From positions 310,001 to 374,000 of the forward strand of contig JAAOMT010000302.1 of the NCBI GenBank assembly GCA_016748015.1: 64,000 nt of DNA, written 5' to 3'. This document shows positions 36,121-42,812 of this stretch, piece by piece (within the stretch, counting starts at the first letter, position 1; every line of letters starts with the position of its first letter). This DNA comes from Geosiphon pyriformis uo1. Its lineage: Eukaryota > Fungi > Glomeromycota. The position numbers and the translations under genes were made by a program. Under the pieces are notes generated by a model that saw only the letters and a program-made list of their open reading frames with translations, did no database searches and had not been told where the DNA came from.

Positions 36121-36965
36121 ATATTGTCTTAATTGGTCTAAATGGCTAATTATATATAGAAAATATATAAGTCATATTTAATATAGAAGCTTGTATGATT
36201 CTATAATCTTAGATAGTAGTTGGATTGTATTTGTAAAACATATAATAATAAAAAATTGATATTAAACTTAATTAAAATATATAATAAATGTATTTTTTTA
36301 ATTAAATAACTTTTTTATTTTTTATTTTTGTAGTTTTTAATAATTATTATTTTTGTTATTTTAATTTGCAATATTGTTAATTAAAGTTTTTTAAAAAATA
36401 AGTTTGTTTTTTTATTATTAAAAAATTAATTATTAATAATTATATTATAACTTTTTTCTATTTATTTATTTATTATTAACTTAAATGTTTAATTATATAT
36501 AAATTTATATATAATTTATATTAATGGTTTTTAAACTTTTTATATATATGCAAATAATAAAATATATTACAATTAAATAAGTTGATTTATTAATTATTGT
36601 ATTAAAAATAAATAAATAAAAAATTAAGACTTGTATAAATTATAAAAATTAAATTTGGTTATCAAAAAAGATACATATTTTTATCATATGGTAAAATTAA
36701 AGTAGTTTTTCATTTTTGAATTATAAAAATTCCAAAAAAAATGGTAAATTAATCAATTATAAAGATCCAAGTTTCCTTAAAGCTGACAGTTTCAGTTCAA
36801 CTGAATTCATTGGCTGTATAAAGGGTTAGGTCGGCTTACCCTGTACTTTCAACCACCCAGATCATGTTTGACGTTAGACAACCGATCTGGTCCCTGATAC
36901 TGGAAAAAAAATGCACCAGCAGTTGCTTCTTTCGCAAACTATCTTGCCTCTCACTCAAACTTTTG

Positions 36966-37065
36966 GTAAGAACTCGTTTCGGCCTGTTCTCAACTCCCTT
37001 ATGCTCATTTCATGACATTTCTTCTATAATTTAAACCCTATTTCCTCTTTCATCCTCCATTATAG
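36966..37065 (+). other. Probable 5' leader intron of the KMT2-like gene
   Basis: G|GTAAGA donor, pyrimidine tract, TATAG acceptor; 100 nt, similar in size to the coding introns. Confidence 0.5.
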
Positions 37066-37149
37066 GTATATATAGTAAATTTGGACTCGTTTCCCAGGCT
37101 GTGGCTAGGGAAGTTACAGAAGAAAGAAGTTTAAAGAATCTCTGCGCCC

Positions 37150-40100
37150 ATGCATAACGACAGTGGTGCTGGAAGACCTTTGACCAACGGACGGCAAAGG
37201 ACACCCGTCAAGCATCAAACTACACAAGAAGAGGAAGAATCTAATGGAGGAAACCAGTCAACGACGCTTACTGTAGTTAATGAAATTTGCGAAGTCAATA
37301 CAGACAACTCTGATAATGGAAGCGACTGTCTTCACAGTCTGAACAATCGAAAAAACCTTAATGTGGTTAATGGAGTCGTTAAAGTTGAAAACTTCAACGA
37401 GTTGAGTAGTCGTAGAAGATTGACTGGCTTGAATGGGAACGCTACCTTTGCAAGAGCAGGACCTTCCAGAGCTGTTAATTCCACGCCTGAATATAATGAA
37501 AGCGCAGGAATGAGTCGAAAAGATTGCCGCAAATTAATGCCGATTACTAGCCACCAAAAGTCTAGGACAAAATTGATTCATTTGGTCGAGGCTGGCCTTT
37601 TGGAGGAGGACGCAGAGGTCATATTTAAAGGCTGTCATGGAACTATAACTAACCAGGGAACCATAATTCCTTCCTATTTATTGGCTGGCGAAGAGGTTAT
37701 CGACGCTTCATCTATCAAGTGGCTTTCTCAAGAATATGATTCACCCAGCGCTTTTGCAGCGGCTGTAAGCACAGCCGGAAGACCTGACAAAAAGGTGTCA
37801 GCTAACGGCTGGTCCTCAATAAAAATATTGAGTCCGACCCGAGATTCTTGGGTACCTCTTGATCACTACCGGCAAATGTATGAATTGAAAGTTGAAAATG
37901 GTTATGATCCATCACAAGAAAAATTTTATGTAAACGATTCATCGATTAAAATGTCTAATTTATCCGACATAGTTTCTCGTAGTGGGACACGGAAAATCAT
38001 AAGCCATTCTCACGGTTTCAAGACATATCGTCGCAATCCAGCTTTAAATACTAAAATATATAGCAAAAGCGAAATTTCACGGCGTAATTTACGTAAATTA
38101 TCTTTTGATTCCCAAATGGATCAGAAGCAAAATACTGATGCTATTGGAAAATCTGAAATGACGTTGAAATCTCGGCGATATCATAATCAATTTCTAAAAT
38201 CAATTGGTCGAGATTCCTTTCGAATGGGTATGCCACTGTATGTAAAATCATCAACGAAATCAGGATGGGATATAGATGAAGGATTCGATTTTTCTAGGAG
38301 TTTACTGCAACCAATTAAGCGCAGTGCAAGTATTACATTAGCCTCTCTAGAAAACATATTGCCTTTGATTAAAAAGCAGATGTTAATATCTAGGGAAGAT
38401 TTTCCCGTACTACCTTTTGTTTTGCATCAAACAATTCCCGTGATTTTAGCTAAGGAGTCTTCACTTTTGAATTCTGATATTTGCTTCGCCTGCGGGACCA
38501 TCGCGAAGTCGGATCAAATGGAAAGCGAAAAAATGATATACTGCGGTCAATGTGGGGAGGCTTATCATTCATTTTGCGTGCTTAAAAAGGAGAACAATGG
38601 GATCTCGCCAAAAACTTCTGTTTGCACGGAGTTTTGGGAATGCCCCAAGTGTACTGTGTGCATCAGATGCTTCAAATCTATTGCCGAATATTCTGAGGGC
38701 TCTAAGAGTCTGCCTGATCAACCCAATACTATTTTGAGGTGCAGTCAGTGTTGCGTAACAGTACATTTAGTATGTCAGGATAAAATGGATCCTTATGTTG
38801 AGGAATCAATGGAGGCAGCAGACGGACAATGGGTGTGTGAAAAATGCGTTTCTTGTGTTGAATGCGATTCAAACCCAGCAATGCATGCAGCAAAAATCGC
38901 TGCTATTGACAAAATACTCAACGTTGACGATCACTATATGTCGGAATGCGACTTCGACGAAAGTGAATCAAAGTCTAAACTACTTAAAGGACCATGGACT
39001 CATGGGTATCGGCTCTGTTCGTTCTGTAGTAATTTAAAAGAAAAAGGAAACATCTGTCCGATTTGTCGAAAATTGTATGGTGACGACGATTATGATATCC
39101 CAATGTTACAATGTGATACATGCCACGAATGGATCCATCAAGAATGCGATGAAAACATGACCAAAGAAATGTATGATGCGATGGATGAAGACGAGAGCTT
39201 GACTTATTATTGTCCAGTTTGTCTAGCCGAGGCTAATGATCAATCGCACATCATGGAGGAAAATGGGTTTGAATTTCAAATCCACCAAGATTTGACTTTT
39301 AAAAAATCAAATATATTATCAAAAGCATATAACACTTCCGAACAGTCTATAAGTGATGATGAAATGAAAGATGCATTTCCCAACAGTGATTCTGCAGAGC
39401 GGGAAGCTGCAGATGCTTTGATATCGATGTTTCAAAACCCCTGTAGTAGGCAGGCTGTGACATTCAAATTCGATGATAGCGAAATTCCTTTGATTGATGA
39501 TAGTAAAGTCCAGCCTTCTGATGATGATCCAATGATGATCGATTCTTCCTTGAAAGTGTTCTCCAATACACAAGAAAGTGTAGTCCTAAATCCGATTAAA
39601 GAACCTGATATTAGAACAGATTCGATTTTTGATGAACTGGGTGTTGAAAGACTTGTCTTAAGTCCATCTCATTATCATACGACACTTAAAATTGATTCTG
39701 TTGTTCAATCTCTTTGTGAAAGCAAGAAAATTCCAAGTCAAATGAACTGTGTTTTGTGTCATATGGGAGATGAGTTGCAACAATCTGTAACACCTGGGCG
39801 GTTAATACCCTTTTGGATTTCAAAAGAACAAAAGTGGGCTCACACTCTATGCCTGATCTTTTCGAAAGGGGTCAAATTGGATGTGACTAATGGAGGATTA
39901 ACTGGGGTACAGGAAGTTATCAAAGAATCTGCTGCAAAGGTTGAATAAAATATCTTCGATATTATAACTTTACAGAGATCGAAATTTATTATAAGCCATG
40001 CTTTTTAATCCGTTCTTTATCCTTTTTTTATGAATAGAAATGCGCGAAATGTAAGAATACTGGGGCTTCCTTAAAATGTGAGGCGAGTTGGCCAGGCTCA

Positions 40101-41969
40101 CTTAAGAGTTGTGTGACCCAATATTGGCACTACCCTTGTATTGCCTCGTCACCAAAATCTTTTGGATATCGGCTAGAAACTCAAAAATTGATTTTACTTT
40201 GTGACGCCCATCATGCAAAAACATCACAAGAGCTTCCACAAAAAGAAATTTCCCCTAATTTTAATTTGAGAAGAGTTTATGTAAATCCTGAGGATTCCTC
40301 CGATTCTATGAAAATTTGGAGCAAACCTACAGAATATTCATGGAGGTTCTCGGAAGTCATTCGATATGGGGCACTTATTATTCATTGCCTTGGAGAGTTC
40401 TCCGAAGACGGTGACTCAATGGTTGATCACTCCGTCGATTACCCAATACCAATAGGATTCCGCTTTGATCGACTCTACGTTCAATCCTCAAGTGGAAGAA
40501 AATTTAAGATTAGCTGTCAGCTGATTGCGATTGACGGAACATTTATTAGCCTTCAAACCAGAAAAAGAAAATACAATGAAGGTCTTTTCGATGAAAATAA
40601 AGTTATCATTAAATATGACTGCCCAAATTCTATACGTTATGGATGGAAAGTTGCAGTTCAAGAAGAAATTAGAGATGTTTCGGAAATTAATAGAAAATAT
40701 GAGTTGGTTGAGTACACAGAAAAGTCATCATTACAAGGTAACAGAATTTTTAAATTCGATTAGATAACTTTAAAATGGATTCCGACTGTATATAATTGTA
40801 TTTAATAATCATGTATCGCGTACAATCTTTTCACAGATGTTATTTCCTGGTTGGTTGAAAGATTTTTAATTCGAGAAGAAAATATGGGCGAATCTAATGC
40901 ACAAACCAAAAACCATTTCTACAACTTTCGACCCGATACCTTTTTCGGTTTAAATTATCCATTGATAATCAAACTAATAAAGTCTCTTCCCAACTACGAA
41001 TTAAGTTTTCAAGCAATGCGCAAATTGCAAGAAAGTCGAGAGAACATGAAAGAAATTATTGAATCGGATGACTATACTTCAGCACGTACAGAACATAGTT
41101 CAAAACAGACCGTTCGCCAAATAAGAAGAATAGGCAGTTGCTGTCATATAACTATATTGGAAAAAGAAAACGCTGATTATGATGTTATTTCTGAGCACCA
41201 GGAATTATTATCAAATCCTCATGGACGTTGTGAGTCCATCATGAATGACTCTAGTCTCATCCAGCAATACACTAGAATGAAGGAAAAACAGTGTGTTAGC
41301 CTGCGACCAACATGGGGTAATAAAGAAACAGACAAGTCGGCGAATGACTATGTCGGACGATCAACTCGTCGTCGTGGCTCAAGTGGTGTCTTGATAATAT
41401 CTGATAACCTAATAGCACCTACTCGAGCAACAAGCTCAAAGTCTAAATGTCCCAAAATTCCTCCTACAGACATAGGGGTTTTTGCTACTCGCGCTTTTGA
41501 AAAAGACGAAATGATAATGGAGTACACGGGTGTTGTTCTCAGTTCTGCTGTGGCAAGACGTCTCGAGTCTAAATATGCTCGCAAGCAATCACAAAATCGT
41601 TACATGATGTGGGGGGATATAAATTGGGTTATTGATGCCAGTCGAGTTGGTGGTTGTGCTCGATATATACGGGAGGATCGACAACATGTAAGCTTTTAAG
41701 TTAAATTTGCAAAAGATTTTGGGCTTATTTTTAGCTCTGCAATACCTTCAATAAAAGGTTCCAATTTTAATTAACAAATATCAATTAATTGAATATGCCT
41801 ATCCTCTTCATAACCTTGTAAACATCAGGCAAACACCTACGCCAAGCCATTTACGATCAATTCAAAACGTAAAATTGCTTTATTTGCACTTCGAAATATA
41901 AAATGCAATGAGGAAATAACGTTTCATTATGGAATAGAAAAAGATGTGAGCCATATCTATTATGCATGA
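37150..41969 (+). CDS. Trithorax/KMT2(MLL)-like chromatin protein: RAMA-like domain, 3 PHD, extended PHD, FYRN/FYRC, Win motif, atypical SET
   Basis: Exons 37150-39939, 40038-40737, 40837-41687 and 41829-41969 are joined by GT-AG introns that keep the frame and restore the ePHD (CAKC..GA..C..C...WHYPC) and SET (ANTYAK..EEITFHY). PHD3 GNICPICRKLYGDDDYDIPMLQCDTC is MLL-like; FYRN IRYGALIIHCLG..PIPIGF; FYRC FFGLNYPLIIKLIKSLP; Win TSARTE. CpG-rich with no stops. Extreme C-terminus uncertain (possible donor at 41946 and exon 42096-42176). Confidence 0.9.
37564..37884 (+). other. RAMA-like domain (aa about 139-245)
   Basis: L..L..AGLL....V.FK..G.I...G.I....Y.SPSAFA......K..ANGWSSIK......LD.YR resembles the MPND RAMA pattern (L..LL...LL..G..FNSPSAWA....K.GCGWASVKY...LDKYK), recalled from memory. 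Confidence 0.7.
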
Positions 41970-42812
41970 AAAGTTGCTTTAGCTCAAATGGACAATAGGA
42001 AACGGCTCTCTCATAACATGGTGAGTATTTATACTAATATGGACTCATTAAAAGTTGAATTGACTATACTCACTTTCAAATTTATTTTAATACAGCTTGT
42101 AACATACTACAGCGCGAAAGACAACGGTAATAGCGTATCGCGATATTTTCTCAATTCTGAGTTTTTGTGTATATAGTTTACCCCTTCCCTTGTTCATCAC
42201 CCTATTAGTCTTTAATATCCAGCTTAGTCTTGTAAATAAGAAAAAGGGAATGGATAATGTTTATTCACTTCATCATATTGTCATATTGCAATAGCTTGTT
42301 TCTCTACCCAACAAAAAAGTATCAAAAGTGGCGGAAGTTAAATTCATATATAAAATCTAATGAGCTCTAATTTTTAATTCTTAAATTCTAAAGAATCAGA
42401 TTTGATCGGCATTCTCTTACGAAATGAGAATTAATTAATTATATTATGGCTCTTTTCACTAAGAAAGCATTGATAGTCGACGTTCTGCGATTTTATGCAG
42501 TTAATACTTTGAAGAGTGCTAAACTAAAAATAAAATTAGAGCTAAATTTGTTACTAAATACATGATAACAACATTATAAGTAAAATATATTTAATGATAA
42601 TTTATCAATGTTTACTGTTAAATTTTTAAATTTTTAAATTTTAATTGTTATATATTAGAATAAATATAATTAAAAAATGTAAAATTCTTTTTTTTTTCTT
42701 AATTATTTGATTAAAACATATATTTTAGCAAGAATTTCTTATTTTCTTAAATATTTTTTTTGTTTATTATTTAAATTTGTTTTTTTTTGTTTTTACATTA
42801 ATAACACAAAAA

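What the first reader, a model, noticed from the sequence alone, without database searches (positions are those of the whole stretch)
37150..41969. MLL/trithorax-like protein fused to a RAMA-like (candidate 6mA-DNA reader) domain
Seen: aa 139-245 carry the L..L...GLL / SPSAFA / NGWSSIK / LD.YR pattern, followed by the KMT2 cassette (PHD1-3, ePHD, FYRN, FYRC, Win motif SARTE, SET). Known: RAMA (as in MPND) is a proposed N6-methyladenine-DNA reader. Many early-diverging fungi mark active genes with symmetric ApT 6mA. The Win motif docks WDR5/Swd3 in COMPASS. Yeast-type Set1 lacks PHD and FYR domains, while animal KMT2A/B use CXXC to read unmethylated CpG. Inference: RAMA may replace CXXC here, directly coupling DNA adenine methylation to COMPASS/H3K4 chromatin and marking gene islands among silenced TEs. 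I do not know of this architecture being characterised in fungi.
Basis: partly seen in the sequence, partly recalled or inferred. Interest (0 to 1): 0.85.

Follow-up and report, generated by a model that had tools for sequence, protein, structure and literature searches.

The report
Fungal MLL-like chromatin reader, dead enzyme
This fungus keeps a relative of the animal leukaemia gene MLL that carries a bacterial-type DNA-binding domain (RAMA) where animals have a CpG-reading finger; its histone-methylating site looks broken, so it most likely acts as a chromatin docking scaffold, and whether it reads methylated adenine is untested and doubtful.

Summary
Observation confirmed. The gene is Geosiphon pyriformis G9A89_015875 (1493 aa, 4 coding exons, single copy). 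RAMA (aa 135-248) passes Pfam's cut-off when scanned alone and folds like MPND and CcrM RAMA (Z 11.9, 11.2). PHD1-3, ePHD, FYRN/C, a Win-like motif and SET follow.

(1) The SET looks catalytically dead: NHSC reads REDR across a splice junction seen in one cDNA-like contig, and GxG and the post-SET cysteines are gone. All 15 Mucoromycota SETs aligned are degenerate, two Kickxellales checked lack SET, and an intact Set1 exists elsewhere in the genome. (2) The fusion is old: Capsaspora MLL and Blastocladiomycota have it with intact SET, so animal CXXC is probably the replacement. (3) The 6mA link is weak: Allomyces and Catenaria keep RAMA without the writer AMT1, no Mucorales orthologue appeared, and MPND's 6mA preference is disputed. 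Geosiphon does encode AMT1.

Best reading: a non-catalytic RAMA plus H3K4me3-reader scaffold docking on WDR5 (0.55); 6mA reader 0.2. RAMA+SET and RAMA+PHD fusions were listed generically in 2016; I found no description of this family. The scan's notes held no earlier report of it.

The parts
37150..39939 (+). Coding exon 1 (aa 1-930): disordered N-terminus, RAMA, PHD1-3, first half of ePHD
   Evidence: cDNA-like contigs cover 37065-37976 and 38060-38972
37552..37893 (+). RAMA domain (aa 135-248), the only RAMA found in the genome
   Evidence: Pfam PF18755, fold match to MPND and CcrM, single match in genome
38482..38865 (+). PHD1 and PHD2 (aa 445-572)
39016..39222 (+). PHD3 of the MLL1 type (aa 623-691), predicted H3K4me3 reader; the best conserved part of the family
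   Evidence: best PDB hit MLL1 PHD3, E 5e-15 against KMT2C 5.5e-5; 32-48% identity across fungi
39748..40211 (+). ePHD (zf-HC5HC2H, aa 867-988), split by intron 1 (39940-40037)
   Evidence: weak Pfam hit E 0.017; conserved Cys/His columns; stronger hits in orthologues
40038..40737 (+). Coding exon 2: rest of ePHD and FYRN (about 40359-40487)
40837..41687 (+). Coding exon 3: FYRC (about 40908-41000), Win-like motif, first part of SET
41079..41093 (+). Win-like motif SARTE (aa 1245-1249), predicted WDR5 docking site
   Evidence: lies about 47 aa after the FYRC FFGL motif, against 46 in an animal KMT2C/D; A-R kept in Jimgerdemannia and Mortierellales; binding untested
41466..41933 (+). Pseudo-SET domain (exons 3-4): fold kept, GxG lost, NHSC replaced by REDR (41670-41681), no post-SET zinc cysteines
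   Evidence: intron 41688-41828 skipped in a contig of run X1
41829..41969 (+). Coding exon 4, ending at TGA 41967-41969
   Evidence: contig reads through 41829-42019 without a splice, so the stop is real
42021..42095 (+). GT-AG intron in the 3' UTR
   Evidence: joint
36500..42500 (.). CpG-retaining gene island (observed/expected about 0.9) inside CpG-depleted flanks (0.0-0.08)

Best explanation
A vertically inherited KMT2 (MLL/trithorax-type) protein that has become a non-catalytic chromatin scaffold. Shown: domain content, RAMA fold, loss of SET catalytic motifs, splicing in one run, conservation, a separate intact Set1. Inferred: RAMA grips DNA backbone and histones without regard to methylation, as MPND and CcrM RAMA do; PHD3 binds H3K4me3 written by canonical Set1; the Win-like motif and the folded pseudo-SET dock WDR5 and probably RbBP5/Ash2L. 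The protein would thus sit on the 5' ends of active gene islands and recruit or titrate COMPASS core subunits or other co-activators rather than methylate H3K4 itself. The RAMA-KMT2 fusion dates to the opisthokont ancestor; the SET decayed in Mucoromycota and Zoopagomycota; animals carry CXXC in its place.
For: NHSC aligns to REDR and the junction is spliced as modelled. Changing MLL1 Asn-3906 abolishes SAM binding and activity but not folding or complex assembly (PMC3887211; that this Asn is the N of NHSC is my own knowledge). 0 of 15 Mucoromycota SETs keep NH, GxG or the post-SET cluster, while all 10 comparison sequences keep GxG and NHSC. The dead SET is still 35-43% identical between Geosiphon and Jimgerdemannia/Mortierellales against 8-20% in linkers and folds as a SET (Z 14.1 to COMPASS Set1). 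No SET within 4 kb of the Coemansia spiralis and Mycoemilia genes. Intact Set1 at G000:C633. PHD3 keeps the Y, Y, M, W of MLL1 PHD3, the KMT2 finger known to bind H3K4me3 (PMC5870349). MPND RAMA binds dsDNA without sequence or 6mA preference and binds histones (PMC9963953). RAMA-KMT2 persists without AMT1 in Allomyces and Catenaria.
Against: No binding, complex or knockout data exist for any member. The Win motif is degenerate in Mortierellales and not recognisable in Capsaspora, Allomyces or Sorochytrium. Methylation-blind binding is extrapolated from MPND, only about 26% identical. Most carriers other than Blastocladiomycota belong to genera that encode AMT1, which a 6mA link would also predict.
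Confidence: 0.55

Rival explanations
1. RAMA is a reader of symmetric 6mApT. With PHD3 it forms a coincidence detector for 6mA linker DNA beside H3K4me3 nucleosomes and recruits the COMPASS core.
For: Geosiphon encodes AMT1 with an intact DPPW motif (L023) and an AMT6/7-like gene. Capsaspora, Mortierella and Coemansia encode AMT1; Mortierellomycota, Kickxellomycota and Zoopagomycota have 0.8-3.8% 6mA (PMC11258239). Animals lost AMT1 and have CXXC in this slot. RAMA was predicted as a 6mA reader (PMC4738411) and MPND RAMA bound one 6mA oligo (PMC6591016). 6mA co-occurs with H3K4me3 (PMC12019607, PMC12695648 abstracts and text).
Against: Allomyces macrogynus and Catenaria anguillulae have RAMA-KMT2 but no AMT1 and Catenaria has almost no symmetric 6mA. 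No Mucorales, Umbelopsis, Rhizophagus or Spizellomyces orthologue was identified among the best 150 hits, though all encode AMT1; this is absence from a capped list with some hits unidentified, not proof. MPND RAMA did not bind 6mA in GATC, an ApT context, and a second study saw no 6mA effect. The PSAWAT motif is shared with animal MPND, so it is no 6mA signature. Glomeromycota have under 0.3% 6mA.
Confidence: 0.2
2. RAMA senses unmethylated CpG-rich DNA, a functional forerunner of CXXC, and targets the protein to CpG-retaining gene islands.
For: Same position as CXXC; no CXXC match in the genome; all 22 gene loci sampled have CpG o/e 0.74-1.15 while the window's flanks have about 0; several C5 methyltransferases; next-best fold neighbours are SAND domains (Z 4.9, 4.2), some of which read unmethylated CpG (own knowledge).
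Against: Z under 5 is not significant; MPND RAMA appeared sequence-independent; many carriers are reported to have little 5mC.
Confidence: 0.1
3. The protein still contributes to H3K4 methylation, through a rewired SET active site or by activating a second site in the WDR5-RbBP5-Ash2L-Dpy30 complex.
For: SET fold, EYxG and the last tyrosine are kept; a complex built on dead MLL1 N3906A still methylated H3K4me1 peptide in vitro (PMC3887211).
Against: Three separate cofactor-binding elements are lost, insertions of varied length sit at the NHSC position, and the domain is absent in the Kickxellales checked.
Confidence: 0.1
4. The gene is a decaying relic without a current role.
For: Progressive loss of SET, weak FYR scores, apparent loss in Mucorales and other Glomeromycota.
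Against: Open 1493-codon frame, spliced transcript, domains far better conserved than linkers, invariant zinc ligands.
Confidence: 0.05

Closest known systems
Animal KMT2A/B (MLL1/MLL2, trithorax)
   Same: Order PHD1-3, ePHD, FYRN, FYRC, Win, SET; PHD3 best matches MLL1 PHD3; Capsaspora RAMA-KMT2 groups with animal KMT2A/B at 93/87, below the starred threshold.
   Different: RAMA instead of CXXC; no bromodomain hit (Capsaspora has one); FYRN and FYRC close together; SET degenerate; no menin match in the genome. The tree does not firmly place the fungal clade with A/B rather than at the base of KMT2.
Capsaspora 'mixed-lineage leukemia protein' (KJE89969/KJE89970) and Allomyces 'trithorax-like protein' (KNE61704)
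   Same: RAMA + PHDs + ePHD + FYRN + SET; database names already call them MLL or trithorax-like.
   Different: Their SET is intact; I found no paper noting their RAMA domain or testing them.
MPND and CcrM RAMA domains
   Same: Same fold (Z 11.9, 11.2) and shared PSAWAT and GW motifs with MPND.
   Different: Fused to a JAMM deubiquitinase domain or an adenine methyltransferase, not to KMT2; 21-26% identity.
RAMA+SET and RAMA+PHD architectures of Iyer et al. 2016 (PMC4738411)
   Same: The paper lists RAMA in one polypeptide with SET and with PHD among 'less common' eukaryotic architectures.
   Different: Its text names no KMT2 family, does not list fungi among RAMA carriers and says nothing of SET decay; its figure 4 and supplement were not readable, so one drawn architecture may be this family.
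Catalytically inactive SET scaffolds (yeast Set3/Set4, MLL5)
   Same: PHD reader plus folded SET without activity (own knowledge; MLL5 SET 5ht6 matches at Z 12.8).
   Different: Separate family; Geosiphon has its own PHD+SET gene of that type at G000:C528 (L011; assignment by my reading).
Canonical fungal Set1/COMPASS
   Same: Related SET (best PDB hits), shared WDR5 docking logic.
   Different: Set1 has no PHD, FYR or RAMA and is intact elsewhere in this genome (L010).

Membership tests
RAMA domain (PF18755) | Profile score above the curated cut-off (35.2 bits) | tested here: met
   41 bits for aa 132-252; 33.1 bits when all of exon 1 is scanned
RAMA domain (PF18755) | Fold of MPND/CcrM RAMA | tested here: met
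6mA reader | Preferential binding to 6mA DNA | not testable with these tools
   homologue data conflict
6mA reader | Co-occurrence with the writer AMT1 | tested here: not met
   present without AMT1 in Allomyces macrogynus and Catenaria anguillulae; not seen in AMT1-bearing Mucorales or Rhizophagus; together in Geosiphon and Capsaspora
KMT2/trithorax family (homology) | PHD cluster, ePHD, FYRN, FYRC and a C-terminal Set1-type SET | tested here: met
KMT2A/B subfamily | MLL1-type PHD3 | tested here: met
KMT2A/B subfamily | Monophyly with animal KMT2A/B | tested here: inconclusive
   fungal rows form their own long-branched clades; no outgroup root; Capsaspora with A/B 93/87
KMT2A/B subfamily | CXXC zinc finger | tested here: not met
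   none in the protein or the genome
Active H3K4 methyltransferase | GxG, NHxC and post-SET zinc cysteines | tested here: not met
Active H3K4 methyltransferase | Methyl transfer in vitro | not testable with these tools
   needs biochemistry
COMPASS-type WDR5 client | Win motif between FYRC and SET, and WDR5 in the genome | tested here: inconclusive
   SARTE at the expected distance from FYRC but 146 aa before EYxG against 86 in KMT2C/D, and patchy in the family; WDR5 at G000:C689; binding untested

The most novel reading that the evidence does not exclude
RAMA-KMT2 is the ancestral opisthokont link between DNA adenine methylation and H3K4 chromatin: RAMA reads 6mApT linkers, PHD3 reads H3K4me3, and animals swapped RAMA for CXXC when they lost AMT1. 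The Blastocladiomycota copies would be leftovers with relaxed specificity. It would be the first 6mA reader in fungi.
Probability: 0.2. Interest if true: 0.9.

Novelty: new variant of a known kind. Interest (0 to 1): 0.58.

Why it matters
A 2026 review states that no 6mA reader is known in fungi (PMC13297926), and PMC12695648 calls finding readers key. This family gives a concrete candidate with natural controls: AMT1-positive (Capsaspora, Mortierella, Geosiphon) and AMT1-negative (Allomyces, Catenaria) carriers. Even if the 6mA idea fails, it shows that early-diverging fungi kept an MLL-type protein beside Set1, that the DNA-binding module of pre-animal MLL was probably RAMA, and that the enzyme decayed stepwise (intact, dead, deleted) while its reader domains were kept, a natural model for the non-catalytic roles of MLL proteins.

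Tried and rejected
Word-based homologue search with the RAMA region found only the protein itself and with a full-length alignment found no fungal relative; these blanks reflect the method, since the exhaustive search found the family. Single-sequence PDB search with RAMA found nothing; the profile found MPND and CcrM. The ESM Atlas feature search gave only leads under 0.9. I looked for a splice form restoring NHSC or post-SET cysteines (donor 41946, acceptors 41734, 41982, 42095, 42112); the contig supports none. P0028 (brittle star repeats) is a spurious RAMA-region hit and was dropped. P0072's weak hit to my RAMA profile was not confirmed by Pfam. The PHD3-only trees were unresolved. The supplement of PMC4738411 is not held. 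No paper holds both Geosiphon and 6mA, and the Mucorales Set1 paper does not mention MLL-like proteins. Exon joins were made only inside local scripts (a coordinate check; X-spaced exon translations of L027 and L010 for the tree).
Full report
Identity and gene model. The protein search returned the window's own product as G9A89_015875 of Geosiphon pyriformis, 1493 aa. Coding exons 37150-39939, 40038-40737, 40837-41687 and 41829-41969 reproduce it exactly, with GT-AG introns of 98, 99 and 141 bases. One public run, labelled 'RNA? (probably DNA)' by the tool, has a contig that skips 41688-41828 and a 3' UTR intron 42021-42095, and another with a poly-A end. I infer this is cDNA; it is one run and does not span introns 1 and 2. 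The gene is the only CpG-retaining island of the window (observed/expected 0.91 against 0.00-0.08).

The RAMA domain is real. Pfam RAMA scores 33.1 bits in exon 1 and 41 bits alone, above the 35.2 cut-off; all 27 aligned family members hit RAMA. Their profile finds MPND (E 0.0011) and CcrM (E 0.029) in the PDB. The model (pLDDT 90) matches MPND at Z 11.9 and CcrM at Z 11.2, with the next chain at 4.9; Foldseek and the Atlas agree. It is the only RAMA found in the genome.

The KMT2 cassette is real. PHD, ePHD, FYRN, FYRC and SET appear in the order of MLL1, the middle three below cut-off. PHD3 is closest to MLL1 PHD3 (E 5e-15; KMT2C 5.5e-5) and keeps the aligned Y, Y, M and W that form the methyl-lysine site by my own knowledge; MLL1 PHD3 is the KMT2 finger reported to bind H3K4me3. 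SARTE lies about 47 residues after the FYRC motif, as the Win motif does in KMT2C/D, but is degenerate or missing in several orthologues.

The SET looks dead. NHSC aligns to REDR (aa 1442-1445), the first glycine of GxG is lost, and the protein ends 12 residues after EEITFHY without post-SET cysteines. The splice that builds this stretch and the stop are both supported by the contig. Replacing MLL1 Asn-3906 abolishes SAM binding and activity but leaves structure and complex assembly intact. None of 15 Mucoromycota SETs keeps these motifs; all 10 comparison sequences keep GxG and NHSC. Dimargaritales read QHSA without cysteines. Coemansia spiralis and Mycoemilia have no SET within 4 kb. The dead domain is still conserved (35-43% against 8-20% in linkers) and folds as a SET, which suggests a structural role. 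An intact Set1 (G000:C633) and WDR5 exist elsewhere in the genome.

The fusion is ancient. The exhaustive search with domain mapping and naming finds RAMA before the PHDs in Jimgerdemannia, many Mortierellales, Dimargaritales, Kickxellales, Allomyces, Catenaria, Sorochytrium and an unnamed JGI contig (L027, intact SET). Capsaspora's annotated MLL has RAMA (37.5 bits alone) plus PHDs, bromodomain, ePHD, FYRN, FYRC and intact SET. The sponge Oscarella has CXXC before its PHDs, and the haptophyte Diacronema has neither domain. A concatenated tree groups Mucoromycota with Zoopagomycota (99/98) and Blastocladiomycota apart (100/100), as vertical descent predicts; Capsaspora joins animal KMT2A/B at 93/87 and there is no outgroup root. 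The simplest reading is RAMA in the opisthokont ancestor and CXXC as the animal-side replacement (inference; choanoflagellates and ichthyosporeans were not sampled).

Does it read 6mA? Geosiphon has the writer: an AMT1 orthologue with DPPW and the GFYLQHAKETC motif at G000:C568 (L023; family assignment by motif from my own knowledge), an AMT6/7-like gene, METTL3 and METTL14. Capsaspora, Mortierella and Coemansia also encode AMT1 and animals do not (the two fungal genera matched at genus level only). But Allomyces macrogynus and Catenaria anguillulae lack AMT1 and keep RAMA-KMT2 with SET motifs intact where seen. Mucorales, Umbelopsis, Rhizophagus and Spizellomyces encode AMT1, yet no orthologue from them was identified among the top 150 hits; some hits stayed unnamed, so this is suggestive only. 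For MPND, one study saw binding to 6mA in one context but not in GATC; the structural study saw no 6mA effect, apparent sequence independence and histone binding. I put the 6mA reader model at 0.2.

Most likely mechanism (0.55). RAMA holds DNA and nucleosomes generally, PHD3 recognises H3K4me3 laid down by Set1, and Win plus the pseudo-SET dock WDR5 and partners, so the protein marks and organises active gene islands without writing the mark. Domain content, fold, motif loss and distribution are shown; every binding step is inferred.

What is known. Iyer et al. 2016 list RAMA with SET and with PHD among less common eukaryotic architectures without naming KMT2 or fungi in the text; the figure and supplement were not readable. 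My paper searches found no description of this family or of its SET decay, within a library that lacks most subscription papers. The scan's own notes hold nothing on it. Verdict: new variant of a known kind, interest 0.58.

Noticed in passing
window 42021-42095: A spliced intron in the 3' UTR begins 51 bases after the stop codon, near the usual threshold for nonsense-mediated decay (own knowledge).
   Followed up: no
window 38972: A contig of run X1 ends here in poly-A, just after PHD2; internal priming or a short RAMA+PHD1-2 transcript.
   Followed up: no
window 1-36500 and 42500-64000: CpG is almost absent (o/e 0.00-0.08) with raised CA/TG, the footprint expected of CpG methylation and deamination in repeats; all 22 gene loci sampled elsewhere in the genome keep CpG (0.74-1.15).
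   Followed up: partly
L023 (G000:C568:494091-497177) and L005 (G000:C645:179597-182836): Geosiphon encodes an AMT1 orthologue with intact DPPW and an AMT6/7-like gene, so symmetric 6mA is likely; METTL3 lies about 140 kb away on the same contig as AMT1.
   Followed up: partly
P0026 (Allomyces) aa 454 and 688: PHD3 occurs twice with identical sequence: a recent duplication or an assembly artefact; one model (P0158) is merged with a trehalose-phosphate synthase gene.
   Followed up: no
L029:464-2716 (P0130, ENA/JGI metagenomes): An unrelated-looking protein with a strong RAMA hit (57.5 bits) followed by PHD fingers, from an unidentified organism.
   Followed up: partly
L041 (GCA_014805555.1), L042, L028: Compact genomes encode shortened KMT2-like proteins (PHD3, SET) with no RAMA detected; by memory the first is a microsporidian.
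   Followed up: partly
G000:C701, C667, C726, C722: Four other loci with strong FYRN matches exist in the genome.
   Followed up: no
P0003, P0152-P0154: Entomortierella and Mortierella orthologues are named 'RNA polymerase II subunit RPB7' in NCBI although they carry RAMA, PHD and SET.
   Followed up: no
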